Shown here in pieces: positions 15,784 through 63,900 of a stretch of DNA of 64,000 nucleotides. The translations under genes were made by a program, and so were the position numbers. Position 1 is the stretch's first letter; every line of letters starts with the position of its first letter. The stretch is from NCBI RefSeq assembly GCF_032062105.1, contig NW_026923709.1, positions 124,001-188,000 on the forward strand. Direction: 5' to 3'. The notes below the pieces were generated by a model. That model had not been told where the DNA came from. It did not search any database and saw only the letters and a list, made by a program, of their open reading frames with translations. This DNA is from Saccostrea cucullata. Its lineage: Eukaryota.

Positions 15784-16334
15784 TTTCCAATCACCCTGAA
15801 AATAAAATAATTAATTCTCCCGTTAAAAACGAAAGCGAAACAGGAAGTAATGTCTGTTAAGTCGTTCGTTTTCTGATTATTAAAAAGAAGAGGATAAAGT
15901 TGACTGATTGATACAGGTAAACAACGTTAATTGCTTTTAATTATTGTTTTCAGCGGAAGTAATAGAATTTCAAACCAAAACGTTCCCCAAAGATTGGTAC
16001 CATATTATATTTATTTCATTTATTTAGCTCACAGGACAGCTGAGGTGGGGATATAGAATGCAAAGTCAATAACAACAAATCGGAAATACATGTACCCCAT
16101 ATTTCATCGATCACGGGAATACAGGGTTGATTACTACGTCGATTAAACATAATCCTGATAGAATTAATGTTCTTTTTTAATTAATTAATAATCCAAAAAT
16201 AAAAACGTCCAACATTACTTCTTTCATGTACACGGGGATGTATATATTCAATTTCAATATTAACTGTAGGACGTTAAACAACATACATGTACGATCAATA
16301 TACTAACTGTAAAGCCTTATGACCCCCTTCCCAA

Positions 16335-23660: not shown

Positions 23661-24240
23661 ACTCCAAAAAAAAATTACCCAAACAAAAGTGATGCAGCCA
23701 CAATATCATAAATATGAGGTTGGTACCCATCCACGACAAAACTCCTCTATAATCAGCTGATAATAACATCTCGGATTCAAGAGAAATCTGTTAAAAAAAA
23801 TAATGCAAAAGATAATTTCGAACTATTTCATTCGGTTAAGAATAAAACACTTCATTTTCTCTCAAAATAAACAAGAAACGGATGACAGTATTGACACTCT
23901 CTGATTTGTAAAGTTTACCTGTATTTCGAGCGAAATATTCCTGGTGGACGCTCGCACCCAATTTTTTATGACATGAAATTCATCCATCGTAAGTCGGAAA
24001 ACCCTTCGGCTTTGTAAAACTATTTAATTTCCCCCACAAGCTTTGTGTAAATCAGAAACATGCTGAACTCAATACACAACACCACCCGGAAGTGAAAGTT
24101 ATCGTAAAATCTCGCGAATCACGTGATGAGACTTACATCCTCTGGACCGAATTTTCTCAGCTTTTGAAATAATGAATAAAAAGATTACTTCCGGTAAAGG
24201 GAGAAGTCATTTCAAATGGAATTTAAATAAACATAATGAA

Positions 24241-24719
24241 GAGAGATATCTCTTTGCAATAAAGAGATATCTCTTTTTGCTTCAGAGATATCTCTTTTCG
24301 ACCCTTTTGAAAGATATCTCTTTCACTTTCAGAGATATCTTTTAAGATAAACTTAGAGAGATATCTCTTTTACTTTAAGAGATATCTCTTTAACTTGGAA
24401 AGATATCTCTCTAAGTGAAAGAGATATCTCTCTAGGTGAAAGAGATATCTCTCTAGTTGAAAGAGATATCTCTTTAACGATCAGAGATATCTCTTTAACG
24501 TTCAGAGATATCTCTTATCACGAAAGAGATATCTCTCAAGGGCAAAGAGATATCTCTCAAAGAAAAAGAGATATCTCTCTCAGTAAAAGAGATATCTCTC
24601 TAACTTTAAGAGATATCTCTTTCTTATAGAGATATCTCTTAAGAATAAGAGATATCTCTTAAATTTGAGAGATATCTCTATTTTTTAAGAGATATCTCTC
24701 TAAAATGAGAGATATCTCT
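24241..24719. repeat. Right subterminal array: ~23 palindromic AGAGATATCTCT motifs at ~21-bp period
   Basis: Direct reading; counterpart of the 15425-15783 array. Confidence 0.95.
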
Positions 24720-24815
24720 GTAATTTTAAAATAAAATTTATTTTCCGAATAAATAGTAAAAGGGCTTAATTGCCATATATATGTTAAGAGTAAAGACACA
24801 TTTCAACCTTTCAGG

Positions 24816-27078: not shown

Positions 27079-29049
27079 CGAGGGCTGTTCAATAAATAAT
27101 GTCCTCGGTGCTCAGAAAGAAGCTTTTCAATGATTTAGTCTTTATGATTTCACTTATATATAAATCTCTTTTAATTCAAACACATGCCCCTGACATTTTA
27201 TACAATTTCTGCTTGTTCTTAGAACTCAGTTTTGGGTATGACCCTTAGTATACTGGAAAATAGCAGATCCAATGATTTCCTGGAATTGTTTTTTCCTTCT
27301 GATAGGTGTTTTTTTTTCAAGTAAAAAGGTCAAAGATCTAGCAAATATTGTTAATGTGAAAAAACATTAACTTTCTGTTTATCCCGAAAACCCCTTTACT
27401 CTTCAGGTCATGCGGGTTTGGACGCTGTCATTAAGAAATTCAACTAGTTGATTCCTAATTCTGGGTCCTTCCTCTAATAAACCTTTGGATTTTTTTTGCA
27501 AACACATTGTTTTCTAGACTCAAATACTCAGATACTAGATTCTAGTCTCCTCGAATACGAATTTGAACAACAGTACCACTAATATTCAAGAAAATTGCAT
27601 ATAAATCTGTCTTTGTGCTCTTGCAAACATTTGCTTTTGTCAAACATTCGCAATTTTTATGCGCCCGGATCGAAAGATCCGAGGCGTATATTGTTTTTGT
27701 CCTGTCTGTCTGTCTGTCTGTTTGTCTGTTTGTCTGCAAACTTTAACCTTGGCCATAACTTTTGAACCATGAATTATAGAAACTTCATATTTGGTATGCC
27801 TTCTCCACTACTAAAGTTCTTTCAAATGACACCAAGATCAATGACCTTGTGACCTTGACTGTGACCTATATGCTAAAAATAGAGTTTTTTTTTGCACACT
27901 TTAACCTTGGCCATAACTTTTGAACCATGAATGATAGAAACTTCATATTTGGTATGCCTACTCCACTACAAAAGCTCTTTCAATTGACACCATGGTCAAT
28001 GACCTTGTGACCTTGATTGTGGCCTTTACGCTAAATATAGCTTTTTTGACGGCAATCTATAACCTTCGCCATATTTTTTGAATGAAGAAAGATAGAGACC
28101 TAATATTTGGCATGCATACTCCACCATTGAAGCCCTTTCACACGACAGCATGGTCAATGACCTTGTGACCTTGAATGTGTCTTACAGTATATGCTAAAAA
28201 TAGCTTTTTTTAAAAACCGTCACCATAACTTTTGAACCATTGAAGATAGAGACTTCATATTTGGCATGCATACTTCACTGATCAAGATCTTTCAAATGAC
28301 ACCATGATCAATGACCTTGTGACCTTCATTGTGACCTTTATGCTTAAAATATTTTTTTAAATTAGTTGACGCCGGGCGCATAGTGTTTTACAAACACATC
28401 TTGTTATCAAGTACATTTTATGGTAAATTTTGTTTTGATGAATTTAAGCAATAGATTCATGTTCCAATATCTGTTTGAATATAAAACAAACGTGGATAAC
28501 TACAATTACTGATTTTTAAAAATGTGTTAAGACTTTAGTACGCGCTGTCATTTCACTCTTTTTTTTTTTAAATATAGGGTGAACTTTGAGTACCAAGCTT
28601 TTATATTATTTGTTGAAATTTGGCGAACAGTACATAAGTTGTTATAATTTTTGTTGGCAAGGAGGTAACCCAGTTTTGACGCCCATTATATAATTTTTTT
28701 CATTGAAATCCACCTGCTCATTGTTTATAAATCAGGCATCGGTTGCTGTAAATGACACATATTTCAGTGAATATTTGTTTGGGATTTTTAACAAGTTTTA
28801 AAGCAGCTTTAATGTAGCCTTTATTTTCACTCTAGTTTACTGATTCTTTGCCATTCATTTATAATGCAGTGTCTCCAAAAGCCCTCGTTTCCCAGCTTTT
28901 CACGATGAAACTATGTGATGAAAAGTGGTCACATAAACTGTTATAAATTAAGTAAAGATTCAATAATGAGAGAAAGTCAAGTTTAATGTCATATCATATC
29001 TGTATTGTATGTCATACAGTTCAGGACATAATTTATTGAACAGCCCTCG
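27079..29049. mobile_element. mariner-type non-autonomous element (TA TSD), nested inside an older MITE (~26908-29092)
   Basis: TA|CGAGGGCTGTTCAATAAATAATGTCC ... GGACATAATTTATTGAACAGCCCTCG|TA; the flanks rejoin into a MITE with GTATAAGTAGAA / TTCTGCTTATAC ends. Confidence 0.8.
27655..28405 (-). mobile_element. HINE with 4 tandem ~140-150-bp units
   Basis: Terminal hairpin ATGCGCCCGGATCGAAAGATCCGAGGCGTAT, (TGTC)n, repeated AATGACCTTGTGACCTT unit, ends CACATCTTGTT. Confidence 0.8.
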
Positions 29050-31073: not shown

Positions 31074-32393
31074 CACAGGTACTTGTGGACAGGACCCCCC
31101 CCCCCCCCGATATTCAACCCCGGGGCTTATTGGACATTTTTTAAAAAAGATTATATTTATTACACTTATTCATCATGTGTACAATATGAAAACAAGAGGC
31201 CCAGGGGCCACAGCGCTCACCTGAGCACATCGGGCTTGAATTTATCCCCCCCTCCAGGCATTCATCATTTGAACAAACTAGAATCTACACTACCTGAGGA
31301 TGATTCCTTATAAATATCACTAATCATAGCTTTGAAGTACTTGAAAAGAAGATTTTAAAAGGTTTCCCTTTATATCCCTATGTAAATCTCTGGTCGGCCA
31401 TTTTGGCCTCATCCTAGCCCCAGGGGTCATGATTTGAACAAATTTGAATCTACACTACCTGAGGATGATTCCACATGAGTTTCATCTTTCCTGGCCCAGT
31501 GATTCGTGAGAAGAAGATTTTTAAAGATTTTTCCTATATATTCCTATGTAAAACTCGGGTCAGCCATTTTGGCCCCACCCTTGCCCTGGGGGTCATCATT
31601 TGAATAAACTTGAATCCAACTACTCTTATTCCACAAGAGTTTCATCTTTCTTAGCCCAGTGGTTCTTGAGAAGAAGATTTTTAAAGATTTTTCCAATATA
31701 TTCCTATGTAAAACTTGGGTCGGCCATTTTGGCACCACCCTTGCCCCGGGGGTCATGATTTGAACAAACTTGAATCTACACTACCTGAGGATGATTCCAC
31801 ATGAGTTTAATCTTTCCTGGCCCAGTGGTTCTGGAGAAAAAGATTTTTCCTATATATTCCTATATAAAAATTGGGTCGGCCATTTTGGCCCCACCCTTGC
31901 CCCGGGGGTCATCATTTGAACAAACTTGAATCTACACTACCTGAGGATGATTCCACAAGAGTTTCATCTTTCCTGGCCAAGTGGTTCTAGAGAAGAAGAT
32001 TTTTAAAGATTTTTCCTATATATTCCTATGTAAAATTTGGGTCAGCCATTTTGGCCCCACCCTTGCCCCGGGGGTCATGATTTGAACAAACTTGATTCTA
32101 CACTACCTGAGGATGATTCCATATGAGTTTCATCTTTCCTGGCCAAGTGGTTCTTGAGAAGAAGATTTTTAAAGATTTTTCCTATACATTCCTATGTAAA
32201 ACTTGGGTCGGCCATTTTGGCCCCACCCTTGCCCCGGGGGTCATGATTTGAACAAACTTAAATCTACACTACCTGACGATGCTTTCACATGAGTTTCATC
32301 TTTCCTGGCCTAGTGGTTCTTGAGGAGAAGATTTTTTAAAACTGCCATTAATTTTTAACAAATTCATGATTATCTCCCCTTGGAAAAGGGCAT

Positions 32394-32436
<43 letters not shown>

Positions 32437-42378: not shown

Positions 42379-42524
42379 NNNNNNNNNNNNNNNNNNNNNN
42401 NNNNNNNNNNNNNNNNNNNNNNNNNNNNNNNNNNNNNNNNNNNNNNNNNNNNNNNNNNNNNNNNNNNNNNNNNNNNNNNNNNNNNNNNNNNNNNNNNNNN
42501 NNNNNNNNNNNNNNNNNNNNNNNN
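42379..42524. other. Assembly gap (146 N)
   Basis: Run of n characters. Confidence 1.
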
Positions 42525-42936
42525 TGACTTTGTAAAATAATAAGTAATCAAAGTGAATTGAAAAAAAAATGACCACTGGATCCACTCTTGGGCACATTTT
42601 ACAGTGTTGCTTTCATTTTGATCTTGAGTTGAAGATGATGAGCTGAGGCAATTTTAAATTTAGTTAAATTGCCTTACATATTATTTTTAATATGTTCCTC
42701 TACATCAATTTCCATTTCTTTCTTATGGTCATCAGATATCATCAGACGAATGAAATCTATGTTAGATCTTATATATATATCATTTAAAAAAAGGAGGGGG
42801 GGGGATTCAACGCATATCAGGTTGTCTAATTATTTGATCGGGATCGGTATTCCAGTAAACTATTATTTCCGGTAAAATGGAGCAGCACGTTTGAGAATGT
42901 TGACAATGTTTTCATTCTTGTTTTAGGAGTTAAACA

Positions 42937-45900
42937 ATGGGTTCGAATAAAAAACAACTTAAAGAAGTTAATAAACAAAAGAAAGGAAAAGGAAAAAGAT
43001 GGAAGAAAGGCCAAAGCAGCAGTAGTAACCCCGAAACTAAAACATTTAGGGAGGCTGCCAAAAACAGATTTTTCCAAACATCGTCATCGAAAGGTTGTTA
43101 GCTCATACGTTTTTTTTTTGTTTTTTTTTGTTTTTTTTTTTACATTAATTTGATTCCTTTTTAGATTGCTTTTAATTTTTTTTCTTACCCGAGGAATAGA
43201 AAGCGTTATTTTCTGCCTCTCGGTCTGATCTTACATGTATTTATTAAAATTTATAAGTTTGCTACACAGGTACTTAGGTCTTCGTTAGTAAATACCTTAT
43301 TTGTTATGATTTGGTTAAGCTGATATTGTTATCCGGAATTATATAATCTTTTGTTGGTTCTGTGTTTTGTAATACTGTAACAGTTGCGTAATGATACAAT
43401 AAAATAGTTCCAAAATGGCATCCTTCTGTGGAGCACATGTGTTTTGACTGTGCACGAACCCATTGTCTAAAAAGACATAACATTGGCGACGAGGATCGTT
43501 CAGGATGGCAAAATTCGCAGCCATTGGTCGTATCGACATCTTCGACAACAATGTCGAAACCTGGAACTCGTACAGTGAGCGCCTTGACCAGTATTTTGTG
43601 TGCAATGACGTCAAGGAGGAAAAGAAAGTTCCCGCATTGCTAAGCCTCATAGGGGGTAAGACTTACCAGTTATTGAGAGGTTTGACAGCACCGACTAAAC
43701 CGGCAGACGTGGAATATGCCGCACTCGTGAAAATCCTTGGTGATCACTTGAACCCCCCTCCTGTAGTAATCTCCGAGAGATTTCGGTTTTACAAAAGGGA
43801 CCAGCGGGAAGGTGAGTCTATTAGAGACTATATAGCGGATCTTAGAAGATTGTCAGAACATTGTGCATTTAAAGACAGTCTGAACGAATCGCTGCGTGAC
43901 AGATTAGTTTGTGGCCTTCGGAGCGAGGCAATTCAGAATAAACTCTTAGCAGAAAAAGACTTGACATTAGAGAAGGCGACGCAGATAGCACAGGCTATGG
44001 AGACCGCATTCAAGGATGCAACCGAGCTGCAGTCCAAACACGTTGGAATGGTAAACAAGCTAGGGGTGAGACAGAAAAAGGGATATCACTCTGCTGGAAC
44101 TGGAGTAAGGTCGCCACAACCCAACATGCCTAAGGTGAAACGAGGTACGAATTCAAAGAAATGTTTCCGTTGTAACAGTACAGCTCATGATCAAAGTCAG
44201 TGTTATTACAAAGACAAACAGTGCTATAATTGTTCAAAAATTGGACATTGTAAAAAGGCATGTAGGAAAACAAAGGAGGTACACAATGTGGACTGGAGTG
44301 AGAATCTCATTGGATCATTAGATGTGAATTCAGTTGAAAAGACTCATTCTGGAGCAATCGTAGTCAACACAAACATTGACGGTGTAGATGTTGATATGGA
44401 ACTCGACACGGGCGCAGCAGTCTCCGTGATGTCAAAGAAAAAGTTCTGTGAGTATTTTCCAGGAAGGATTAAGAACTTACCTGAATCAAATATGTGTTTA
44501 AAGACATATACTGGTGAAATCTTGAAGCCTTGTGGAGTGGCACGTGTAAATGTGAGTCACAACAACCAGAAAAAGGATCTAGACTTGTACGTGATGCAGA
44601 AGGCAGGACCAACGCTCTTCGGAAGAGAGTGGCTTCAGCAGATTTCACTCGATTGGCCGTCCATCAAGTCCATGTCGTGTGTGACAGACAAGATTTCAGA
44701 CACTTGTTCTGATAATGTGAAAGCGGACTTAAAACACATGTTGGAAAAACATCGTTCAGTTTTCCAGAGTGACATAGGTACGGTTAAGGGTATTGAAGCT
44801 ACACTCAACTTAAAGCCGGACGCTAAACCAAAGTTCTGTAAAGCCCGCTCAGTACCGTATGCTCTCAAGCCTAAGGTCGAGGCTGAACTGGACAAACTAG
44901 TCAGAGATGGTATCATAACCAAGGTGGACTACAGCGAATGGGCAACGCCTATTGTCCCTGTCATCAAGTCTGATAAAAATGTGCGCATATGTGGTGATTT
45001 CAAGGTGACACTGAACCCTGTTCTTGAAATCGATCAGTATCCGCTGCCCCGCATTGAAGACATTTTTGCAGCACTCGCAGGTGGTAAGCGATTCACCAAG
45101 TTAGATTTACGACATGCATATCTACAAATGAGAGTAAATGAGGAGTCGCGCAACTTATTGACAATAAATACAGAGAAAGGACTCTACCGCTACAACCGTT
45201 TAGTTTATGGTGTGGCCTCAGCTCCTGCAATCTGGCAAAGGACCATCGACACAGTCTTACAGGGTCTCACAGGCGTCAAATGTATCATTGATGATATGAT
45301 AATAACGGGCTCATCTGAGGAAGAACACCTGAAGAATTTGGAAGCTGTATTAACGCGCCTGGATGAATACAACTTGCGTGTGAACTTGAATAAGTGTGAA
45401 TTCTTCAGAGAACGTGTTTCTTATTGTGGACATGAAATAGACTGTGAGGGTCTGCACAAAACGCAATCCAAGATTGAAGCAGTTGTCAGTGCGCCGAAGC
45501 CGAAGAATGTTTCAGAGTTGCGATCATTTCTGGGCATTGTTAACTATTATGCCAGATTTTTGCCTAACCTTTCAAGTCTTTTGTACCCGCTACACCAGTT
45601 ACTGTCAAAGAGCCGAAAGTGGTCCTGGTCTAGCGAATGTGACAAGGCATTTTCTGAAGTCAAACAGCTTATTACCTCTGATGAGATTTTGACTCATTAC
45701 GACCCACAGCGAGAGGTGCGATTAGCATGTGATGCTTCACCTTATGGTTTAGGGTGTGTATTATCCCATGTCATGGATGACGGATCAGAACGACCGATAG
45801 CATATGCATCTCGATCATTGTCGTCAGCAGAGCGGAACTATTCACAGATAGATCGTGAGGCTCTGGGGATAGTATGGGGTGTGAAACGTTTTCATACATA

Positions 45901-48900
45901 CCTCTATGGAAGACACTTCACTTTATTGACGGATCATCGCCCTCTTGTGTCCATCTTCAGCCCCAGCAAAGGTGTATCAGTCACCACAGCAGCACGCATG
46001 CAGAGATATGCTCTGTTTTTATCAGGGTATGATTATGACATTATGTACAAAAACACCAAAGCGCATGGAAATGCAGATAGCTTATCGAGGCTACCACTGT
46101 CTGACTGTGAATCTGATGATGATTATCAAGATATTGACTTGATGTACCTACCACAATTTGAAACATTACCAATCACCAGTGACCGTATTAGACAGGAAAC
46201 TGGACGTGATCCTGTCACTGTGAAGGTATATGGTTATACCATGAATGGATGGAGCTTTTCGGTCAAAGCAGATGATAAGGACTTGTATCCCTACTTTACG
46301 CGTAAGGACGAGTTAACAATTCACAATGGATGTTTGTTGTGGGGAATGAGAGTTGTTGTTCCAACAAAGCTTAGGGATCACATACTTAAGGAGCTTCATT
46401 TAGGTCACATTGGAGTAGTGAAGATGAAGGCATTAGCTCGAAGTGTGGTATGGTGGCCCGGGATCGATCTTGATATAGAGAGGATCACGAAAGCATGCTC
46501 AGGATGTCAGGAGTTCAAGCGTGCACCTCCAGCAGCCCCCATTCATCCGTGGGAGTGGCCCACTAAACCTTGGGAACGTATCCATATAGACTTCGCTGGG
46601 CCTTTTATGAACTGGATGTTCCTGGTAGCAGTAGATGCACATTCTAAATGGCCTGAGGTCATAATGATGCGCGAGACGACATCCCACAAGACTATTGAGG
46701 TCTTGAGAAGTATCTTTGCTAGAAATGGTGTTCCTACAGTGTTGGTCAGTGATAACGGACCTCAGTTTATGTCAGACGAGTTTGGAAACTTCATTCGTAC
46801 CAATGGAATAAAGCATGTGACTTCTGCTCCATATCATCCTAGCTCAAATGGATTAGCGGAACGTTTTGTACAATCATTCAAGTCCGCAATGAAGTCAAGC
46901 AAGAAAGATGGAGGTTCTGTGGAAACGAAGTTATCTAACTTTTTACTAGCCTATCGCAACGCAGCACATTCAACTACTGGAGAGTCACCCGCAAAGCTAT
47001 TCATTGGTCGTTCATTGCAGTCACGACTAGATTTGATAAAACCAGACATTGAACAAAATGTTAAAAACAAACAGTTTCACATCGCATCTAAGAGATCAAG
47101 TTCATTGCGTGTGTTTGAACCTGGGCACAGTATAATTGTTAGGGACTACCGTCACAGTTCAAAGTCGGACTGGGTACCAGGAACCGTTCAAGAGCAGACA
47201 GGACCTGTTTCTTACAGAGTGCAAGTTGGGGACAATACTTGGAGAAGACACGTAGATCAGATATATGATTCTTCACTAAAGAATCAGGGAGTTGTACCCA
47301 GTGATCTTGAGAAGTTTGTGCCACAGGTACATGTACCAACTCCTACAGTTAGTGCTAAGCAGTCTAGTCCAGAAGTCTTTCCGCAAGGTACGAAAGTCAG
47401 GCAGTCAACTCCAGAGGTCTTCAACAGGAAGAAAGCTAATAGTCCTATCCAGGAACAGAAATCTCAGCCAGAAGTTAGGACCGAGCCTACCATACTAGCC
47501 AGACAAAATCCAAGACGAAATGTTGGACCGCCCAAACGTTTCAGTGACTATGTTACTTTCAAATGAATTGTGCATTTTGTTTTGTGTATTATGGCACAGT
47601 ATTGGGGCACAATAATCCCCGTGCCTTTGTGTTGACCAAGAGGTCATTTTCACTTTGTATACTGTATTGTGTTGAATGTATTGGCCTGGTAAAACATGTC
47701 TGTGAAGTTTAATATTTGAAATGTGTATATTGCCCAAAATTTCATTCAATTTAAGTTCTGATTTTAATTCTTGTGGAAGTCAAAATTTAGTGGGGAGGAA
47801 TGTTATGATTTGGTTAAGCTGATATTGTTATCCGGAATTATATAATCTTTTGTTGGTTCTGTGTTTTGTAATACTGTAACAGTTGCGTAATGATACAATA
47901 AAATAGTTCCAAAATGGCATCCTTCTGTGGAGCACATGTGTTTTGACTGTGCACGAACCCATTGTCTAAAAAGACATAACATTATTGATCAATGTTCACT
48001 TTTACCTTTTTTTATCATATCAATAAGGTACATAAATATTTATAAACCAAGACTCATGTGCATGTGGGTTGCCCCTGCCCGATTAAAACATTTTATTGGC
48101 AGTACAATAGTTGGGGCGAGCACAGTTTTGTATAATAGAATTACTGTAAACCAACTTTTATTCGTGTGTGAGAAATTTTCACGAGGTTCGCGAGAGCCTT
48201 GTCATGGAGAATATTTCTCACCGCGAACCGGTCCTTAAATTCCCTGTTGCTATGAACAACAACCTCAAAAAAGGCTTGATCGCGAAAATTTATCGTCGCA
48301 AACTACTTTTTAAGGAGTAAATCGCGAAATAAAGTTGTCACGAATAAAAGTTGGTTTACCGTATTCTACGTTATTTGTAAGGTTACGGATGGGTTCGCTC
48401 TGATAAGGTGTTCATGCTGAGTTGTATCTCGCTGAGTGGTTTCGCCCCATTTAACTACAGGGTATACAATGTCATGTAAATGTTCTTCTATTAAGTGATA
48501 ATTTATATTACACACATGATGTATGCAACAGTAATTAGATAATTGAATAACATTTTATATCTGATATAGAGTGAGTTTTTTTTATAAATTGAAAAGACAT
48601 GTGAAAGGTCTAGACTGTGATGGTGTTTTAGTTCCATAATTCAGTTTGAAATGTGCCATTTTTACACTAATTTTCTACATGGGACATACCGTATAATGGG
48701 TATTTTTTACGTGCTGCTAATTTTTACAAGTTTTATAAATCCGTAAAATTTAAACGTGTAAAATTTCACATGATTTATAAAACGACTCGTGTAAAATTTC
48801 AACATCATTTGTGTAAAAATAATGCTAATTACCATTAAGCTCACTCCCTGGAGGCTAAATGATTAGTGTAGTGTTGATATTTTGAGCACTTTTAAGTCAA

Positions 48901-51900
48901 TCATCAATTGGGATCATATAGGTAAATCTCAATTAACTTGTATGAATTATACAAACATCGTATATTAATTAATCAATTAAACCCACCTGGTCACTTTTTT
49001 TTTAGTATTTTTACGAGAAACTAACTTCCGACAATGCCTTTATGATTACAGGTCTTCCAATTATACCCGTGTTTTCAATCTTTGACCCTTTCTTCTGTTT
49101 CATGTTCTTTGAATAAAACTTTGACTTCCTAATAGACTGTCATACTTGTACTTCAATTATGATAGTTTGAGTTGTCTCTCTTTGTATTCGGTAAAAATGG
49201 TGTGCCTAGCTTTGTGTTTTATAGAATTTGAATTTATAAATGAAGGGCACCTTGTTCGTGTACATAAAGGTAAATGATAAAAACATTATACAATGTGTAA
49301 TTTGTTGCATTGTTTATATTGTTAAAATTTAATAAATCTCTCTCTCTTGCCTCTCTCTCTTGCATCGGACACATTATATTTACTGTCAGAAACGCATTCA
49401 AAGTGCTGACAATCACTGATCTGGAATTTTACATCTGATGATTTTAATTTTTAAGGACATGAAAATGATGTTCAATTTGTAAAATATTAACGCGTAAAAA
49501 TTTAAATCACCCTCTTTTGACCAAAATTCGTAAAAATTTACAGCAGTAAAAATAACCCGTTATACGGTATACACAGTATTACACTGTATGTTCTAAAAAC
49601 CTGATATACTGTAGATCTAGCCATGACCTGATGAAAAAATGTCCTTTAAAATTAATTTATCTCCATGTATCTGCACAATCCTTTATCTGACATTTTTATT
49701 TCAAAGTTTTTCATTTGTAAACTTTGGTTCATTGACATATCATGCATTATATGTATGTTGTTTATGGAGGAATATCAATGACTATTGGTAATGAGTTTAC
49801 TACATTTTGCATGCCAATCAAATTTTTATTTAAGCTGATTATTATAATAGTCTGATAGTAATTATGCACATCTAAATGCAGGCTTATGTTTTACACAAAG
49901 ACAATTTTGTCTATTTTTTTTAAATTCTTTTGAAACAGGAGAAAGTAGTCTTACTGTTGATGCTTTGGCTAAACATAATGAAGAACAGTTAGATAAAGAT
50001 GGTGATGTTAGTCTACGAGCGGAGTCAGATGTTGTCAGCGCTGCCGGAAAGACGTTTAATACCTGGGCGACAAACTGGACAGAGTGTACCAACACAACAT
50101 TTAGTCGAGTACATAGGTACTGGGCATCAAATTCGGCTTTTCATAAAGAGGTAAGTGAAATTATTTTAGAGGATGTTTTCATCATTTGTTTAAGTAAGCA
50201 ACACAAGTGTTCACAAATTTTGGAGGGGAAAATCTTTTTATTTCGAAATCTGAGTGTGGTTTACAATTACATGTAGCTGGTAATTGTGCAGTTGAGGATT
50301 CTGATTCAAATACTGGAGATTCCTTATTTTTTGAGAGCTTAAATTTTCATGAAATGTCTCTTTCACATTTAGTGGGGGTACAATAATTAATAATGATAGT
50401 AGACAGTTTATCGCGAGATTTTACTTTGATTTCAGCACCGAGAAAATAAAAGCGAGTAATTTTATTTTGCGAGAGGTGCTTGTCACTCATGATCATAAGG
50501 CATTCTTTTTGTAGGTGTTAGCTGTGTTAGCGGCAGTTACAGAGGTGATAAAAACCCAGGGAGGCTCTGAATCAGAAACAGAATACTTCGCTGCTTTGGT
50601 GGGTGTTTTACTTCAGCTTTCTGATTCATGATTATCATGTATAAAGTACATTTATCTTAAATTGTTAAAAAAAGACCCAGAAAATGATGTATAATGATTA
50701 ATGAAATATCTCTTTAGAAGACTTTGTCTGTTTTTTTTTTGTCATACTAAACAAGTTTTACATGTACTTTATAATGTAAGAACAGTATCAGATAATTATT
50801 TGAACAGATGACAGCACTGGAGACAACAGAGGGAGAAGACTCTGTATCAGCCGTGGCCTACCTCCTCAGCTTAGTCATGAAGAGGTCAGTCACCTTGTAC
50901 ACATATATAACTGTATAATTAGTAATTTTAGTGAGATGCAAATTTGATTGTTTTATGGAAATACTTCTAGAATCAATGATGTAAATGCTGTGAAAATTAT
51001 CCACATTGCTAAACCTGTAACATGATATTAAGTCTCCTCCAAAGAGAAAATTTGTTTGGAGCATATGTCCTAAAATGTTAATAGATATTTTTTGCATGAG
51101 AACTGTTTCTTATTATTTACAGAGTTCCTGCCCCAGTCCTAAAGAGAAGGTTTTCAGAAATTTCCAAAGAATTTCTGGATGTCCTTGTGAAGTACAGCGA
51201 GGGGCATTCTCCTGCTCTCCTCAAGTCTGTAAGTACTTAGATTTCCATCAGTGTTACACCGTACGCTCTACAGAAAACCAGTCTCTTAAATGCTTTGTTA
51301 CTGCCGCAGCTATTATTTGCAAATAAGTCTGACACTTTGAAATCCATCCAAGTCTTGACATTTTTCAGACTGATGCACAATTTTTAATAAAAAATTTTGA
51401 CCAGAAATATGTTTAAAAAGAGAAGGTCACAAAACCTGTGGATTTTTCATTGAGTTAATATTTGATTTGCAGGTGCTTGATATTGTTCGTAAATTTTTAA
51501 CTACTGTTAATTTCTTTTAAAATTTTTAATTTGTAGTTGTTGCTGTGTCTGGCGTTGCTGCTTAGAGTTCAGGACCAGGCTACTTGGAGTAACTCCTCCA
51601 CACAGCGAGTGTATCAAAGTATGCTGGCCTTCACAGTCAACAAAAAGCCTAAGGTATCATCTGTATCATATTACTGACAACAAAAAACCCAATGTATAAT
51701 CATAGACAACAAAAAAACCCAAGGTATAATCATAGACAACAAAAAACCAAAATTAGATATTATCACTGACAACAAAAAAAAAAAAAAACAAAGGTATTTT
51801 TACTGACAACAAAAACCCAAGGTATCACTGACAGCAAAAAAAAAAAACCAAGGCACTATTACAATGAACAAAAAACCCAAGGTATTATCACTGACAACAA

Positions 51901-54900
51901 AAACCCACAACTTTATCACCGACAACAAAAAAAACCCCCAAGATTTTATCACTGACAGCAAAAAAAAACCCAAAGGTATTTTCACAATCAACCAAACACG
52001 TAAGGTTTTATCACTCACAACAAAAAAAAAAATTAAGGTAGTACTATCATAGTCAACAAAAAACCAGGGATATATCGTATCACTTACAGAATATTAAATT
52101 TATATGTGTATACACATGTATATATATTCATTGTTTTGAAAGTTCAGAATGCAGAATCATGTATCTGACAGTCATCATTCTGATAATAATCTGTTTGGTA
52201 TTTCTTTTGGCAGGTGAGAAAGGCAGCACAACAAGGGGTGAATATTGTCCTGAGGGGTAGTGTCTTTATGAACCCACCAGAGACGGCCCCTCCCCACCAC
52301 CCCGCCAGCTCCCTGACCGCCAAGTTCTGTATCCAGGTCATCGAGCAAAGCGGAGGTTAGAGCTACTGTGAACTCAGTTATTTTCGTGGGGGTTTCATTT
52401 TTGTGGTTTTTTAAGGTATGAAGGGACCCAAGAATTCATGTCCACCATGAAATGTACTTTTTTTTAAGATATCATTCCTCAACAATTCTTCATCCTCGAA
52501 ATTAAATCCCCATGAACCCACATTTCTTCCTCAAACCGCGAAAATTTGATCCCACGAAAATATGCGATTTTACAGTAAACACTGAGTGCAAAATTCATTC
52601 TTGATTAATTTTTCTTAACATATTTAAAAAGGACTATTCTTTTACCTTTTGTTTGAATGTGTAAAATTCTTGTTTAATTGTAAATGACAAGTATTTTTAT
52701 ACACATTTGGTGGGAAAAAAATCCAGAAAAAATAACATCTGTAAATTGATAGTATTAAGATCTACAAAAAACAAAGGAAAGCTTGTGACCAACTCCTTGA
52801 GGTTAAAATTGTGAAAGATTCTCACATGTGGATACTAAAAGGTATTCAATAGGGTCTGTAACTAAGGTATATTTCAGTATTAAGATCTATTTAAAAAAAA
52901 AAAACAATGCATCAAAGTTTTTTTCTTTTTTCTACAGGTTCTACAGAGTCTTCAGACACACTATACATTCTAACCTTATTGAAGGACATCATGTGTACAT
53001 TCTCTCAGAGTAGTCTGAAATCAGTGTGTGAGACCATACTGAGAGTGATGACACTAAGTAATGTGGTGAGTATACTGATAGAAATCAGTGTGTGAGACCG
53101 TACTGAGAGTGATGACACTGAGTAATGTGGTGAGTACTGATAGAAATCAGTGTGTGAGACTATACTGAGAGTGATGACAGTAATGTGGTGAGTACTGATA
53201 GAAATCAGTGTGTGAGACCATACTGAGAGTGATGACACTTAGTAATGTGGTGAGTACTGATAGAAATCAGTGTGTGAGACTATACTGAGAGTGATGACAC
53301 TTAGTAATGTGGTGAGTACTGATAGAAGTCAGTGTGTGAGACCATACTGAGAGTGATGACACTTAGTAATGTGGTGAGTACTGATAGAAATCAGTGTGTG
53401 AGACCATACTGAGAGTGATGACACTTAGTAATGTGGTGAGTACTGATAGAAATCAGTGTGTGAGACCATACTGAGAGTGATGACACTTAGTAATGTGGTG
53501 AGTATACTGATAGAAATCAGTGTGTGAGACCATACTGAGAGTGATGACACTTAGTAATGTGGTGAGTACTGATAGAAATCAGTGTGTGAGACCATACTGA
53601 GAGTGATGACACTTAGTAATGTGGTGAGTACTGATAGAAATCAGTGTGTGAGACCATACTGAGAGTGATGACACTGAGTAATGTGGTGAGTATACTGATA
53701 GAAATCAGTGTGTGAGACTATACTGAGAGTGATGACAGTAATGTGGTGAGTACTGATAGAAATCAGTGTGTGAGACCGTACTGAGAGTGATGACACTAAG
53801 TAATGTGGTAAGTATACTGATAGAAATCAGTGTGTGAGACCATGAGACCGTACTGAGAGTGATGACACTTAGTAATGTGGTGAGTACTGATAGAAGTCAG
53901 TGTGTGAGACCATACTGAGAGTGATGACACTTAGTAATGTGGTGAGTACTGATAGAAATCAGTGTGTGAGACCATACTGAGAGTGATGACACTTAGTAAT
54001 GTGGTGAGTACTGATAGAAATCAGTGTGTGAGACCATACTGAGAGTGATGACACTTAGTAATGTGGTGAGTATACTGATAGAAATCAGTGTGTGAGACCA
54101 TACTGAGAGTGATGACACTTAGTAATGTGGTGAGTACTGATAGAAATCAGTGTGTGAGACCATACTGAGAGTGATGACACTTAGTAATGTGGTGAGTACT
54201 GATAGAAATCAGTGTGTGAGACCATACTGAGAGTGATGACACTTAGTAATGTGGTGAGTATACTGATAGAAATCAGTGTGTGAGACCATACTGAGAGTGA
54301 TGACACTTAGTAATGTGGTGAGTATACTGATAGAAATCAGTGTGTGAGACCATACTGAGAGTGATGACACTTAGTAATGTGGTGAGTACTGATAGAAATC
54401 AGTGTGTGAGACCATACTGAGAGTGATGACACTTAGTAATGTGGTGAGTACTGATAGAAATCAGTGTGTGAGACCATACTGAGAGTGATGACACTTAGTA
54501 ATGTGGTGAGTATACTGATAGAAATCAGTGTGTGAGACCGTACTGAGAGTGATGACACTTAGTAATGTGGTGAGTACTGATAGAAATCAGTGTGTGAGAC
54601 CATACTGAGAGTGATGACACTTAGTAATGTGGTGAGTACTGATAGAAATCAGTGTGTGAGACCATACTGAGAGTGATGACACTGAGTAATGTGGTGAGTA
54701 TACTGATAGAAATCAGTGTGTGAGACCGTACTGAGAGTGATGACACTGTAGTAAGTGTGGTGAGAGTGATACAGTGTGTGAGAGTAATGACACTTAGTAA
54801 TGTGGTGATACTGATAGAAATCAGTGTGTGAGACCATACTGAGAGTGATGACACTTAGTAATGTGGTGAGTACTGATAGAAATCAGTGTGTGAGACCATA

Positions 54901-57900
54901 CTGAGAGTGATGACACTTAGTAATGTGGTGAGTACTGATAGAAATCAGTGTGTGAGACCATACTGAGAGTGATGACACTTAGTAATGTGGTGAGTATACT
55001 GATAGAAATCAGTGTGTGAGACCGTACTGAGAGTGATGACACTTAGTAATGTGGTGAGTACTGATAGAAATCAGTGTGTGAGACCGTACTGAGAGTGATG
55101 ACACTTAGTAATGTGGTGAGTACTGATAGAAATCAGTGTGTGAGACCATACTGAGAGTGATGACACTTAGTAATGTGGTGAGTACTGATAGAAATCAGTG
55201 TGTGAGACCATACTGAGAGTGATGACACTTAGTACTGTGGTGAGTACTGATAGAAGTCAGTGTGTGTGTCTACTGATAGAAGTCAGTGTGTGAGACCGTA
55301 CTGAGAGTGATGACACTTAGTAATGTGGTGAGTACTGATAGAAATCAGTGTGTGAGACCATACTGAGAGTGATGACACTTAGTAATGTGGTGAGTACTGA
55401 TAGAAGTCAGTGTGTGAGACCGTACTGAGAGTGATGACACTTAGTAATGTGGTGAGTATACTGATAGAAATCAGTGTGTGAGACCATACTGAGAGTGATG
55501 ACACTTAGTAATGTGGTGAGTACTGATAGAAATCAGTGTGTGAGACCGTACTGAGAGTGATGACACTTAGTAATGTGGTGAGTACTGATAGAAATCAGTG
55601 TGTGAGACCGTACTGAGAGTGATGACACTTAGTAATGTGGTGAGTACTGATAGAAATCAGTGTGTGAGACCATACTGAGAGTGATGACACTTAGTAATGT
55701 GGTGAGTACTGATAGAAATCAGTGTGTGAGACCATACTGAGAGTGATGACACTTAGTAATGTGGTGAGTACTGATAGAAATCAGTGTGTGAGACCGTACT
55801 GAGAGTGATGACACTTAGTAATGTGGTGAGTACTGATAGAAATCAGTGTGTGAGACCGTACTGAGAGTGATGACACTTAGTAATGTGGTGAGTACTGATA
55901 GAAATCAGTGTGTGTGTGAGTACTGATAGAAATCAGTGTGTACTGAGAGTGATGACACTTAGTAATGTGGTGAGTACTGATAGAAATCAGTGTGTGAGAC
56001 CATACTGAGAGTGATGACACTTAGTAATGTGGTGAGTACTGATAGAAATCAGTGTGTGAGACCATACTGAGAGTGATGACACTTAGTAATGTGGTGAGTA
56101 CTGATAGAAATCAGTGTGTGAGACCATACTGAGAGTGATGACACTTAGTAATGTGGTGAGTACTGATAGAAATCAGTGTGTACTGAGAGTGATGACACTT
56201 AGTAATGTGTTGTGTACTGATAGTACTGAGTGTGAGAGACCATACTGAGAGTGATGACACTTAGTAATGTGGTGAGTACTGATAGAAATCAGTGTGTGAG
56301 ACCGTACTGAGAGTGATGACACTTAGTAATGTGGTGAGTACTGATAGAAATCTGTGTGTGAGACCGTACTGAGAGTGATGACACTTAGTAATGTGGTGAG
56401 TATACTGATAGAAATCAGTGTGTGAGACCATACTGAGAGTGATGACACTTAGTAATGTGGTGAGTATACTGATAGAAATCAGTGTGTGAGACCATACTGA
56501 GAGTGATGACACTTAGTAATGTGGTGAGTAGTGATAGAAATCAGTGTGTGAGACCATACTGAGAGTGATGACACTCAGTAATGTGGTGAGTACTGATAGA
56601 AATCAGTGTGTGTGAGAGTGATGACACTTAGTAATGTGGTGAGTACTGATAGAAGTCAGTGTGTGAGACCATACTGAGAGTGATGACACTTAGTAATGTG
56701 GTGGGTACTGATAGAAATCAGTGTGTGAGACCGTACTGAGAGTGATGACACTCAGTAATGTGGTGAGTACTGATAGAAATCAGTGTGTGAGACCATACTG
56801 AGAGTGATGACACTTAGTAATGTGGTGAGTACTGATAGAAATCAGTGTGTGAGACCATACTGAGAGTGATGACACTTAGTAATGTGGTGAGTACTGATAG
56901 AAATCAGTGTGTGAGACCATACTGAGAGTGATGACACTTAGTAATGTGGTGAGTATACTGATAGAAATCAGTGTGTGAGACGGTACTGAGAGTGATGACA
57001 CTTAGTAATGTGGTGAGTACTGATAGAAATCAGTGTGTGAGACCATACTGAGAGTGATGACACTTAGTAATGTGGTGAGTATACTGATAGAAATCAGTGT
57101 GTGAGACCGTACTGAGAGTGATGACACTTAGTAATGTGGTGAGTACTGATAGAAATCAGTGTGTGAGTGTGTAATCAGTGTGTGAGAGTGATGTAGTAAT
57201 GTGGTGAGTACTGATAGAAATCAGTGTGTGAGACCGTACTGAGAGTGATGACACTTAGTAATGTGGTGAGTACTGATAGAAATCAGTGTGTGAGACCATA
57301 CTGAGAGTGATGACACTTAGTAATGTGGTGAGTATACTGATAGAAATCAGTGTGTGAGACCATACTGAGAGTGATGACACTTAGTAATGTGGTGAGTACT
57401 GATAGAAATCAGTGTGTGAGACCATACTGAGAGTGATGACACTTAGTAATGTGGTGAGTATACTGATAGAAATCAGTGTGTGAGACCATACTGAGAGTGA
57501 TGACACTGAGTAATGTGGTGAGTATACTGATAGAAATCAGTGTGTGACCATACTGAGAGTGATGACACTTAGTAATGTGGTGAGTACTGATAGAAATCAG
57601 TGTGTGAGACCATACTGAGAGTGATGACACTTAGTAATGTGGTGAGTACTGATAGAAATCAGTGTGTGAGACCATACTGAGAGTGATGACACTTAGTAAT
57701 GTGGTGAGTACTGATAGAAATCAGTGTGTGAGACCATACTGAGAGTGATGACACTTAGTAATGTGGTGAGTATACTGATAGAAATCAGTGTGTGAGACCA
57801 TACTGAGAGTGATGACACTTAGTAATGTGGTGAGTACTGATAGAAATCAGTGTGTGAGACCATACTGAGAGTGATGACACTTAGTAATGTGGTGAGTACT

Positions 57901-60900
57901 GATAGAAATCAGTGTGTGAGACCATACTGAGAGTGATGACACTTAGTAATGTGGTGAGTACTGATAGAAATCAGTGTGTGAGACCATACTGAGAGTGATG
58001 ACACTTAGTAATGTGGTGAGTACTGATAGAAATCAGTGTGTGAGACCATACTGAGAGTGATGACACTTAGTAATGTGGTGAGTACTGATAGAAATCAGTG
58101 TGTGAGACCATACTGAGAGTGAGTGTGTGACACTTAGTAATGTGGTGAGTATACTGATAGAAATCAGTGTGTGAGACCGTACTGAGAGTGATGACACTTA
58201 GTAATGTGGTGAGTACTGATAGAAATCAGTGTGTGAGACCATACTGAGAGTGATGACACTTAGTAATGTGGTGAATGATGAAATCACTGAGAGTGATGTG
58301 ATGTGGTGAGTATACTGAGAGTGATGACACTTGATAAATCAGTGTGTGAGACCATACTGAGAGTGATGACACTTAGTAATGTGGTGAGTAAACTGATAGA
58401 AATCAGTGTGTGAGACAGTAGTGAGAGATATGACACTTAGTAATGTGGTGAGTGTACTGATAGAAATCAGTGTGTGAGACCATACTGAGAGTGATGACAC
58501 TTAGTAATGTGGTGATAGAAGAAATCAGTGTGTGAGACCGTACTGAGAGTGATGACACTTAGTAATGTGGTGAGTACTGATAGAAATCAGTGTGTGAGAC
58601 CGTACTGAGAGTGATGACACTTAGTAATGTGGTGAGTACTGATAGAAATCAGTGTGTGTGTGATGACACTTAGTAATGTGGTGAGTACTGATAGAAATCA
58701 GTGTGTGAGACCGTACTGAGAGTGATGACACTTAGTAATGTGGTGAGTACTGATAGAAATCAGTGTGTGAGACCGTACTGAGAGTGATGACACTTAGTAA
58801 TGTGGTGAGTACTGATAGAAATCAGTGTGTGAGACCATACTGAGAGTGATGACACTTAGTAATGTGGTGAGTATACTGATAGAAATCGTACTGAGAGTGT
58901 GTGTGAGTACTGATAGAAATCAGTGTGTGAGACCATACTGAGAGTGATGACACTAGTAATGTGGTAGTACTGATAGAAATCAGTGTGTGAGACCATACTG
59001 AGAGTGATGACACTTAGTAATGTGGTAAGTACTGATAGAAATCAGTGTGTGAGACCATACTGAGAGTGATGACACTTAGTAATGTGGTGAGTACTGATAG
59101 AAATCAGTGTGTGAGACCGTACTGAGAGTGATGACACTTAGTAATGTGGTGAGTACTGATAGAAATCAGTGTGTGAGACCATACTGAGAGTGATGACACT
59201 TAGTAATGTGGTGAGTACTGATAGAAATCAGTGTGTGAGACCATACTGAGAGTGATGACACTTAGTAATGTGGTGAGTATACTGATAGAAATCAGTGTGT
59301 GAGACCATACTGAGAGTGATGACACTTAGTAATGTGGTGAGTACTGATAGAAATCAGTGTGTGAGACCATACTGAGAGTGATGACACTTAGTAATGTGGT
59401 GAGACCATACTACTGATAGAAATCAGTGTGTGAGACCATACTGAGAGTGATGACACTTAGTAATGTGGTGAGTACTGATAGAAATCAGTGTGTGAGACCA
59501 TACTGAGAGTGATGACACTGAGTAATGTGGTGAGTACTGATAGAAATCAGTGTGTGAGACCGTACTGAGAGTGATGACACTTAGTAATGTGGTGAGTACT
59601 GATAGAAATCAGTGTGTGATACCATACTGAGAGTGATGACACTTAGTAATGTGGTGAGTACTGATAGAAATCAGTGTGTGAGACCGTACTGAGAGTGATG
59701 ACACTTAGTAATGTGGTGAGTACTGATAGAAATCAGTGTGTGAGACCGTACTGAGAGTGATGACAGTAATGTGGTGAGTACTGATAGAAATCAGTGTGTG
59801 AGACCATACTGAGAGTGATGACACTTAGTAATGTGGTGAGTAGTGATAGAAATCAGTGTGTGAGACCGTACTGAGAGTGATGACACTTAGTAATGTGGTG
59901 AGTACTGATAGAAATCAGTGTGTGAGACCGTACTGAGAGTGATGACACTTAGTAATGTGGTGAGTACTGATAGAAATCAGTGTGTGAGACCATACTGAGA
60001 GTGATGACACTTAGTAATGTGGTGAGTACTGAGAGAAATCAGTGTGTGAGACCATACTGAGAGTGATGACACTTAGTAATGTGGTGAGTACTGATAGAAA
60101 TCAGTGTGTGAGACCATACTGAGAGTGATGACACTTAGTAATGTGGTGAGTACTGATAGAAATCAGTGTGTGAGACCATACTGAGAGTGATGACACTTAG
60201 TATTGTGGTGAGTACTGATTGAAATCAGTGTGTGAGACCATACTGAGAGTGATGACACTTAGTAATGTGGTGAGTATACTGATAGAAATCAGTGTGTGAG
60301 ACCATACTGAGAGTGATGACACTTAGTAATGTGGTGAGTACTGATAGAAATCAGTGTGTGAGACCATACTGAGAGTGATGACACTTAGTAATGTGGTGAG
60401 TACTGATAGAAATCAGTGTGTGAGACCGTACTGAGAGTGATGACACTTAGTAATGTGGTGAGTATACTGATAGAAATCAGTGTGTGAGACCATACTGAGA
60501 GTGATGACACTTAGTAATGTGGTGAGTACTGATAGAAATCAGTGTGTGAGACCATACTGAGAGTGATGACACTTAGTAATGTGGTGAGTACTGATAGAAA
60601 TCAGTGTGTGAGACCATACTGAGAGTGATGACACTTAGTAATGTGGTGAGTACTGATAGAAATCAGTGTGTGAGACCATACTGAGAGTGATGACACTTAG
60701 TAATGTGGTGAGTACTGATAGAAATCAGTGTGTGAGACCATACTGAGAGTGATGACACTTAGTAATGTGGTGAGTACTGATAGAAATCAGTGTGTGAGAC
60801 CATACTGAGAGTGATGACACTTAGTAATGTGGTGAGTACTGATAGAAATCAGTGTGTGAGACCGTACTGAGAGTGATGACACTTAGTATGTGGTGAGTAC

Positions 60901-63900
60901 TGATAGAAATCAGTGTGTGAGACCGTACTGAGAGTGATGACACTTAGTAATGTGGTGAGTACTGATAGAAATCAGTGTGTGAGACCATACTGAGAGTGAT
61001 GACACTTAGTAATGTGGTGAGTATACTGATAGAAATCAGTGTGTGAGACCGTACTGAGAGTGATGACACTTAGTAATGTGGTGAGTACTGATAGAAATCA
61101 GTGTGTGAGACCATACTGAGAGTGATGACACTTAGTAATGTGGTGAGTACTGATAGAAGTCAGTGTGTGAGACCGTACTGAGAGTGATGACACTTAGTAA
61201 TGTGGTGAGTACTGATAGAAATCAGTGTGTGAGACCATACTGAGAGTGATGACACTTAGTAATGTGGTGAGTACTGATAGAAATCAGTGTGTGAGACCAT
61301 ACTGAGAGTGATGACACTTAGTAATGTGGTGAGTACTGATAGAAGTCAGTGTGTGAGACCGTACTGAGAGTGATGTACTGAGAGTGATGAACTTAGTAAT
61401 GTGGTGAGTACTGATAGAAATCAGTGTGTGAGACCGTACTGAGAGTGATGACACTTAGTAATGTGGTGAGTACTGATAGAAATCAGTGTGTGAGACCATA
61501 CTGAGAGTGATGACACTTAGTAATGTGGTGAGTACTGATAGAAATCAGTGTGTGAGACCGTACTGAGAGTGATGACACTTAGTAATGTGGTGAGTACTGA
61601 TAGAAATCAGTGTGTGAGACCATACTGAGAGTGATGACACTTAGTAATGTGGTGAGTACTGATAGAAATCAGTGTGTGAGACCATACTGAGAGTGATGAC
61701 ACTTAGTAATGTGGTGAGTACTGATAGAAATCAGTGTGTGAGACCATACTGAGAGTGATGACACTTAGTAATGTGGTGAGTACTGATAGAAATCAGTGTG
61801 TGAGACCATACTGAGAGTGATGACACTTAGTAATGTGGTGAGTACTGATAGAAATCAGTGTGTGAGACCATACTGAGAGTGATGACACTTAGTAATGTGG
61901 TGAGTATACTGATATAAATCAGTGTGTGAGACCGTACTGAGAGTGATGACACTTAGTAATGTGGTGAGTACTGATAGAAATCAGTGTGTGAGACCGTACT
62001 GAGAGTGATGACACTTAGTAATGTGGTAAGTACTGATAGAAATCAGTGTGTGAGACCATACTGAGAGTGATGACACTTAGTAATGTGGTGAGTACTGATA
62101 GAAATCAGTGTGTGAGACCATACTGAGAGTGATGACACTTAGTAATGTGGTGAGTACTGATAGAAATCAGTGTGTGAGACCGTACTGAGAGTGATGACAC
62201 TTAGTAATGTGGTGAGTACTGATAGAAATCAGTGTGTGAGACCGTACTGAGAGTGATGACACTTAGTAATGTGGTGAGTACTGATAGAAATCAGTGTGTG
62301 AGACCGTACTGAGAGTGATGACACTTAGTAATGTGGTGAGTACTGATAGAAATCAGTGTGTGAGACCATACTGAGAGTGATGACTTAGTAATGTGGAAGT
62401 ATCAGTGTGTGAGACCATACTGAGAGTGATGACACTTAGTAATGTGGTGAGTATACTGATAGAAATCAGTGTGTGAGACCGTACTGAGAGTGATGACACT
62501 TAGTAATGTGGTGAGTATACTGATAGAAATCAGTGTGTGAGACCGTACTGAGAGTGATGACACTGAGTAACGTGGTGAGTACTGATAGAAATCAGTGTGT
62601 GAGACCGTACTGAGAGTGATGACACTTAGTAATGTGGTGAGTATACTGATAGAAATCAGTGTGTGAGACCGTACTGAGAGTGATGACACTTAGTAATGTG
62701 GTGAGTACTGATAGAAATCATAGAAATCAGTGTGTGAGACCGTACTGAGAGTGATGACACTTAGTAATGTGGTGAGTACCAATAAAACACAGAGTTTGAT
62801 AATATAATTGGTAATGTGGTTAATACCAATACAAATACAGAGTTTGAGACTATCCTTAGTAATATGGTGAATGCCAATACCAATGTAAAATATTTGTGTA
62901 TTGACAATTATTTTTTTTTGCAGATGGTGACATCTTGTGGAATGAAGGCTTTATATAGCCTCTTTAATGGAAATCCCAGGGTTACTACTCTGAATGCAGA
63001 ACTGAATGCACAAATGATCAAAGTAGGTTTAGAAACCCATGTACATGTTTTATAACCACGCAATACATTGATGTACGGTCCATAAGGCCGTCAATCAGCT
63101 GTCAATTATGTCTGTATTTGTATTTTGTAGGCTTTGTATGAATACCAACCTTCAAATAATGATGTACAACCAATGAAGGCGTGGCTAGCAGTAATGGAGG
63201 CAGCACATAAAAATCTGACAAGGTAAACAGTCATTAGTGTTCCCATGAGACAAATCAGGTTTAAGGCCTAAAGAAAATAAATAACTTGATTCTCAGGCCA
63301 GTTTTGTCACGAACAAATAGGGGAAGCAGGTTTTTTTCTTTATACTTCATAAACACAGGCACCAGCTTTTAGATTTTTTTTATAATTTCAAAAATTATAA
63401 ATTTTTGTAAATGCTTCAATATTGAGTGTAGAAATGGGAATAAAAAGGTATTTACAGTATTACAGAAAAAAAAAATTCTTTTTGGTCGCTGATTATTTTG
63501 TGGTGAATTTCAGACTGGATGAGAAGCTCTGTCTTGGACACCTCCCCCGTTTCTTCTCGGTGTGTATGATGTGTCTTCTGTCTGAGAAAGCCGAGGTCAA
63601 CTCTAGTGCCGCAAAAACCATGAAGGTCTGTATATCTGATCTGTCTATTGTAGTACTCTATACAGGGTTATTCTTGCCCCCATGTTATTTTCGCCCTTTC
63701 ACACTTGTAAACAAATTTGCCCCATTTTGAATTTGTTTTAGAATTATAATACTGTATTCTTTGAATTCGTCCTGTTTTTAATTCCCCCAAATAAGGGTTG
63801 GGAGGAGAAGGGGCAAAATAAAATGGAGGTGAAAATTGGATAGTTTGCATCCCGGGAAGAATGATCAAGAAATCAAATAAACTAATTTTCAGAGTTGTCG

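What the first reader, a model, noticed from the sequence alone, without database searches (positions are those of the whole stretch)
53017..62779. A satellite made of a splice junction: ~155 tandem copies of the RRP12 exon 8 end with its 5' splice site
Seen: the unit is 48 nt of coding sequence (AAA TCA GTG TGT GAG ACC ATA CTG AGA GTG ATG ACA CTT AGT AAT GTG = [16 protein letters not shown]) plus a 14/16-nt linker GTGAGT(AT)ACTGATAG that starts with GT and ends with AG. It makes up nearly all of a ~9.9-kb intron in a conserved ribosome-biogenesis gene. The pre-mRNA therefore carries ~155 near-consensus donors in the same upstream context as the real one. Reading through the first donor hits TGA at 53093-53095, so simple use of any downstream donor gives a premature stop. 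Established: U1 snRNP binds such sites, and PTC isoforms are NMD substrates. Inference: the array could be a U1 decoy/telescripting platform, a copy-number-dependent NMD rheostat, a pool of in-frame 48-nt phase-0 pseudo-exons (weak: no polypyrimidine tract, linkers too short to be introns), or a neutral product of a process that amplifies exon-intron junctions.
Basis: partly seen in the sequence, partly recalled or inferred. Interest (0 to 1): 0.9.

Follow-up and report, generated by a model that had tools for sequence, protein, structure and literature searches.

The report
Oyster RRP12 splice-donor minisatellite ("mirage")
In a rock oyster, the end of one exon of the ribosome-assembly gene RRP12, with its splice signal, has been copied about 158 times into the next intron; this is a very large example of a known and probably harmless repeat type, and comparison with a sister species shows the copies keep tracking the real exon as it evolves.

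Summary
The array is real: 159 units of 62/64 bp (147 exact donor 9-mers), starting in RRP12 exon 8 of Saccostrea cucullata and filling 98.5% of the 9,858-nt intron. A second haplotype carries it with another unit order. It belongs to a known class: exon-intron-boundary minisatellites (amphioxus 'mirages'; human F7, CBS, ABCA7), where the first donor normally wins. This scan has reported the class many times in this genome. What this locus adds: S. echinata has the orthologous array (about 11 copies), and each species' array matches its own exon (0-1 differences) although fourfold sites differ by 28.5%, so the array is homogenised with the coding exon. In RRP12 of eight bivalves, junction echoes occur at 16 of 254 donors and 0 of 254 acceptors, in all stages from two copies to decayed. 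Best reading: a tolerated, mostly neutral expansion re-seeded from the exon. The pseudo-exon and U1-decoy ideas are poorly supported; leaky nonsense isoforms remain possible.

The parts
52938..53065 (+). RRP12 coding exon 8 (phase 1 start, phase 0 end)
   Evidence: P0184 maps without mismatch; PDB match to RRP12-like protein 7wts_K residues 299-339, E 5.6e-7
53018..53065 (+). Exon tail (16 codons) that is the first, coding copy of the repeat unit
53066..53071 (+). Authentic 5' splice site GTGAGT; same position in all eight bivalve orthologues
53066..62779 (+). Intronic array, 158 units of 62/64 bp (14/16-nt linker plus copy of exon tail), 146 further exact donor 9-mers
53093..53095 (+). In-frame TGA met if any downstream donor is used
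62785..62880 (+). Two decayed 46-48-bp relic units at the distal end; they keep the longer AAA(T/C)ACAG junction seen in S. echinata units
62924..63022 (+). RRP12 exon 9, first exon after the array
51631..52060 (+). Second, decayed donor array (about 29-30-bp unit) at the exon 6 donor (53 = 51653|51654); better kept in S. echinata

Best explanation
A donor-spanning minisatellite ('mirage', F7 type). A tandem duplication of 48 nt of exon tail plus 14 nt of intron arose before S. cucullata and S. echinata split (shown by orthology and relic units). It left the mRNA unchanged because the most upstream donor is chosen (shown for human F7; inferred here). With no cost, slippage and unequal crossing-over expanded it to about 159 units in this lineage. 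Turnover includes the first unit, which is the exon itself, so the array consensus tracks the coding sequence (pattern shown; direction of transfer inferred, mainly exon to array, with selection removing harmful array-to-exon transfers). The unit folds as one stem-loop closed by its two ends, which may have fixed the break points and helped expansion (inferred). Any transcript using a later donor carries a stop at about codon 351 and should go to NMD. The array most likely has no selected function.
For: Orthologous array in S. echinata with the same linker and left end, about 11 copies; none in C. virginica, intron 222 nt. Fourfold-site divergence 28.5%, yet the two arrays differ in their exon part at only two synonymous sites, and at codon position 24 each array carries its own exon's base (G in the exon and in all 154+58 scored units of S. 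cucullata, C in S. echinata and C. virginica); chance of no change at about 34 replacement sites under free drift is 4e-3 to 6e-5. Donor echoes at 16 of 254 donors, 0 of 254 acceptors, null about 0.1; about 12 independent events, binomial p 0.0005. All life stages are seen in one gene: two copies (intron 21), expanded (8), decayed (6, 17). Same structure in myosin and aldehyde dehydrogenase genes of this genome. An Ostrea-like contig has an unrelated 28-bp array at the same donor. Literature: first-donor preference (PMC1557585); mirages do not disturb splicing (PMC3087553). Full-length 1,289-aa product annotated on this contig.
Against: ABCA7 shows that such arrays can leak one unit and change splicing with length (PMC5954066). 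N-truncated RefSeq isoforms starting in exon 7 exist in three species that have exon-6 arrays, compatible with leakage but not proof. The donor/acceptor count comes from one gene chosen because it has an array. The fold excess is modest (p 0.013-0.027) and not general among arrays (p 0.053).
Confidence: 0.75

Rival explanations
1. Copy-number-dependent NMD rheostat: more donors divert more transcripts to stop-containing isoforms and tune RRP12 dose.
For: Every downstream donor gives a premature stop; downstream donors match U1 almost as well as the real one (7.5 against 8.5 on a simple count); ABCA7 precedent (PMC5954066); truncated RefSeq isoforms in species with exon-6 arrays.
Against: In F7, CBS and 6-16 only the first one to three sites are used whatever the copy number (PMC1557585), so 159 copies would act like 3. 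Copy number is 0, 11, 159 across oysters and arrays come and go at many donors. No listed isoform of S. echinata or of this contig starts as expected from intron-8 leakage (weak).
Confidence: 0.12
2. U1 decoy or telescripting platform.
For: 147 near-consensus sites on the sense strand.
Against: No poly(A) signal within the array; one AATAAA at 62781. A few nascent transcripts of one gene cannot titrate U1, which is among the most abundant snRNPs (own knowledge). Donor positions are not better conserved than other positions, and predicted structure covers much of each site.
Confidence: 0.04
3. Pool of in-frame 48-nt pseudo-exons.
For: Linker starts with GT and ends with AG; 88 of 158 units encode the same peptide.
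Against: No pyrimidine tract (8/20 against 10-18), 14-nt linkers far below intron size, frame not kept in S. echinata; within-array variants are not significantly synonymous (8 of 21, expected 24%, p 0.11).
Confidence: 0.02
4. The two Saccostrea arrays arose independently at the same break points, so the match to each exon needs no concerted evolution.
For: The stem closing the unit could favour the same end points; exon 6 arrays of Crassostrea and Mytilus both start at about -66 with unrelated linkers.
Against: Identical 14-nt linker, and relic units in S. cucullata keep the S. echinata-type junction that is absent from the exon.
Confidence: 0.12
5. Length is inflated or collapsed by assembly.
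For: The second haplotype contig begins inside the array; no spanning reads were seen.
Against: 55 unit types, no N, one 1-nt deletion, haplotype-specific variants, longest shared run of unit types only 3.
Confidence: 0.05

Closest known systems
Amphioxus 'mirages' (Adh3, globins BflGb6/BflGb9, PGBD5; PMC3087553, PMC3902484)
   Same: Tandem copies of an exon-intron boundary running into the intron, haplotype differences, homogenised interior with diverged end units, host gene apparently intact.
   Different: Described mirages have few units (3-6 in BflGb6) and occur at both boundaries; here 159 units, and in bivalve RRP12 only donors. Tracking of the exon across species was not found in the papers I could search.
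Human F7 intron 7 VNTR, and CBS intron 13, 6-16 intron 2, LMNB2, PDGF (PMC1557585)
   Same: First unit spans the donor; identical pseudo-donors follow; the upstream-most site dominates.
   Different: 5-26 copies and, in F7, only 4 exonic bases; here 48 exonic bases and 159 copies.
ABCA7 intron 18 VNTR (PMC5954066)
   Same: Donor-containing unit, alleles up to 10.7 kb (about 427 units), retention of one unit gives a premature stop.
   Different: Unit begins at the GT and has almost no exon sequence; length-dependent splicing was shown there and is untested here.
Internal tandem repeats at exon-intron boundaries in human segmental duplications (PMC2812944)
   Same: Repeats at boundaries can alter splicing.
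   Different: Those create introns or extend exons in young paralogues; here a single-copy conserved gene keeps its structure.

Membership tests
Mirage / F7-type boundary minisatellite | Head-to-tail tandem array with minisatellite-size unit | tested here: met
   62/64-bp unit, 159 units
Mirage / F7-type boundary minisatellite | First unit spans an authentic exon-intron boundary | tested here: met
   Donor 53065|53066 fixed by exact mapping of P0184 and conserved in eight bivalves
Mirage / F7-type boundary minisatellite | Downstream units repeat the splice signal | tested here: met
   147 exact sites
Mirage / F7-type boundary minisatellite | Single-locus and variable between alleles | tested here: met
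   Only two contigs match; unit order and variants differ between haplotypes; length of haplotype 2 unknown because its contig starts in the array
Mirage / F7-type boundary minisatellite | Interior homogenised, boundary units diverged | tested here: met
   Relic units at 62785-62880 in both haplotypes
Mirage / F7-type boundary minisatellite | Normal splicing at the first donor | not testable with these tools
ABCA7-type splicing-modulating VNTR | Isoform ratios change with allele length | not testable with these tools
   No RNA or population data
Multi-locus satellite DNA family | Arrays at several loci | tested here: not met
   Matches only at this locus and its haplotype; the tool warns that its counts are lower bounds

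The most novel reading that the evidence does not exclude
In bivalves a transcription- or splicing-coupled mutational process duplicates 5' splice junctions at several percent of introns, and the resulting arrays exchange sequence with the coding exon in both directions, so that an intronic repeat can write variants (here Ile to Val in 43 of 158 units, and indels in 23) into an essential gene and raise the mutation load on exon 3' ends.
Probability: 0.25. Interest if true: 0.7.

Novelty: new member of a known kind. Interest (0 to 1): 0.38.

Why it matters
The class is known and this scan has met it often in this genome, so the array itself is not a surprise. It is useful as a natural experiment: 147 equal donors behind one real one, with unit variants that mark each site, test the first-come rule of 5' splice-site choice far beyond the F7 case and outside mammals. 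The cross-species result shows a coding exon taking part in repeat homogenisation, which makes a testable prediction about exon-end polymorphism. The donor-only pattern in eight bivalves asks whether mutation or selection makes the asymmetry. Practically, such arrays break contigs and mislead annotation: the second haplotype's RefSeq model (P0182, 955 aa) starts in an array unit.

Tried and rejected
O. edulis gene too long to fetch. The original mirage paper (PMC117041) is not held; cited through PMC3087553. Rejected: repetitive top hits P0001, P0005, P0006 (unrelated repeats, saposins); coding-like selection on variants within the array (p 0.11); special accessibility of the real donor (mean unpaired 0.44, array sites 0.25-0.70); hairpin units as a general rule (p 0.053); the z-score of -6, inflated because shuffles are not tandem (proper null z -2.3). 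Literature searches for a bivalve or genome-wide description found none, but most subscription papers are not searched.

Full report
Observation. Tandem Repeats Finder gives period 62 from 53017 to 62779. A wraparound alignment resolves 159 units, counting the copy inside the exon and partial units; 140 have the whole 48-nt exon part and 147 have an exact GTG|GT(G/A)AGT site. Thirty of the 158 intronic units have the 16-nt linker. The sense strand is strongly G-skewed (0.46).

Gene and organism. The exon matches a solved RRP12-like protein. The window lies on contig C5846 of 220,430 bases, the contig length given for the RefSeq protein XP_062602976.1 of Saccostrea cucullata (P0184). That protein maps as 33 exons without a mismatch; exon 8 is 52938-53065, intron 8 is 9,858 nt and the array is 98.5% of it. 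Reading through the first donor meets TGA at 53093; the 14-nt linker and the S. echinata linker also lead to stops. So any later donor gives a premature stop with 24 junctions downstream, an NMD substrate by established rules.

Is it real? The unit matches only this contig and C3286. C3286 is a second haplotype, about 96.4% identical in the flank. It starts inside the array and holds at least 62 units with its own variants; the two haplotypes share 8 unit types and no run longer than 3. The array has no N and only one unit with a 1-nt deletion. An artefact is unlikely; the exact length needs spanning reads.

Other oysters. S. echinata has an array at the same donor: 64-bp unit, about 11 copies, same 14-nt linker, same left end. 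C. virginica has none there. An Ostrea-like metagenome contig has an unrelated 28-bp array of about four copies at this donor. Two decayed units at the far end of the S. cucullata array keep the longer junction of the S. echinata units, which the exon lacks. The array therefore most likely predates the species split.

The array tracks the exon. Fourfold sites of RRP12 differ by 28.5% between the two Saccostrea species. The exon parts of their arrays differ at only two sites, both synonymous. At unit position 24 the S. cucullata exon and all scored units of both haplotypes have G, while S. echinata (exon and array) and C. virginica have C. A freely drifting intronic array would show changes at replacement sites; none among about 34 has probability 4e-3 to 6e-5 for divergence 0.15-0.25. 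Turnover must include the exon copy. The direction is not shown. Position 39 has all four bases among exon and units, as expected if successive exon alleles were copied in. Variants inside the array are not significantly synonymous (8 of 21 types, p 0.11), so the constraint acts on the consensus, not on each unit. The reverse flow is a hazard: of 158 units, 43 encode Ile to Val, 23 have indels in the exon part, 3 other missense changes and 1 a stop.

It is one of many. With exact junctions from RRP12 of eight bivalves, a probe of 15 exon and 6 intron bases finds an echo in the adjacent intron at 16 of 254 donors and 0 of 254 acceptors, against about 0.1 expected for each. These are about 12 independent events (p 0.0005); the gene was chosen for having one. 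Saccostrea RRP12 alone shows a two-copy stage (intron 21), expansion (8) and decay (6, 17). Myosin and aldehyde dehydrogenase loci of this genome show the same. Earlier notes of this scan report the class in many genes of this genome; I checked the pattern only on the samples above.

Mechanism. Shown: a duplication of exon tail plus intron head, older than the species split, expanded and homogenised with the exon. From literature: in human F7 the most upstream of identical donors is used and the others do not compete (PMC1557585), and amphioxus mirages do not disturb splicing (PMC3087553). Inferred: the same rule makes donor duplications nearly free, and may make acceptor duplications costly, since there the last site must be chosen; a mutational bias at donors is the alternative. 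The unit folds as one stem-loop closed by its ends (p 0.013), which could set break points during slippage, but this is not general among the arrays (p 0.053). The G skew could favour R-loops; this is speculation.

Pseudo-exons: 8 of 20 pyrimidines before the internal AG against 10-18 at real acceptors, and the frame is not kept in S. echinata. Telescripting: no poly(A) signal in the array. U1 decoy: too few sites against the U1 pool (own knowledge). NMD rheostat: possible, with ABCA7 as precedent (PMC5954066), and three species with exon-6 arrays have RefSeq isoforms starting in exon 7, but similar truncated models occur without arrays, and known cases use only the first few sites.

Limits. 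Masked N at 42380-42525 were left alone.

Verdict. A real, unusually large new member of the mirage / F7 class, probably without selected function. The cross-species tie to the exon and the donor-only pattern are worth a follow-up. Interest 0.38.

Noticed in passing
window 43302-47981 (+), RRP12 intron 1: Ty3/Gypsy-type LTR retrotransposon: 1,353-aa open frame with RT, RNase H and integrase, two identical 181-bp LTRs, TTATT target duplication; a very recent insertion in the sense of the gene. Observed only.
   Followed up: partly
window 51654-52060: Decayed donor array at exon 6; exon 6 donors also carry arrays in S. echinata (29 bp), C. virginica (76 bp x19) and two Mytilus species (103-106 bp). 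The Crassostrea and Mytilus units both begin 66-68 nt inside the exon, with unrelated linkers: a hotspot or a very old array.
   Followed up: partly
L009, RRP12 intron 21 (window-continued 67897-68101) and intron 17: Two-copy 105-bp donor duplication in both haplotypes; decayed remains of the 52-bp intron 17 array that is intact in S. echinata.
   Followed up: partly
G000:C3286, protein P0182: RefSeq model of the second haplotype starts with the last six codons of an array unit because its real exon 8 lies off the contig: an annotation artefact.
   Followed up: yes
L019 1715-1914, L039 2061-2429, L040 about 450-582, L060 1898-2171: Donor-spanning arrays in three myosin genes and after the stop-codon exon of an aldehyde dehydrogenase gene; the L039 unit holds a perfect 8-bp complement of its own donor.
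   Followed up: partly
P0181, P0185, P0193: N-truncated RefSeq RRP12 isoforms of S. echinata, C. virginica and M. edulis all start in exon 7, just after an exon-6 donor array; may reflect use of a downstream donor.
   Followed up: no
window 15425-15786 and 24235-24744: Two 21-bp arrays built on the palindrome AGAGATATCTCT.
   Followed up: no
window 27729-28358 and 31262-32419: 156-158-bp and 166-bp tandem arrays of the kind common in oyster Helentron-like elements (resemblance from memory, not tested).
   Followed up: no
window 42380-42525: 146 N, left untouched.
   Followed up: no
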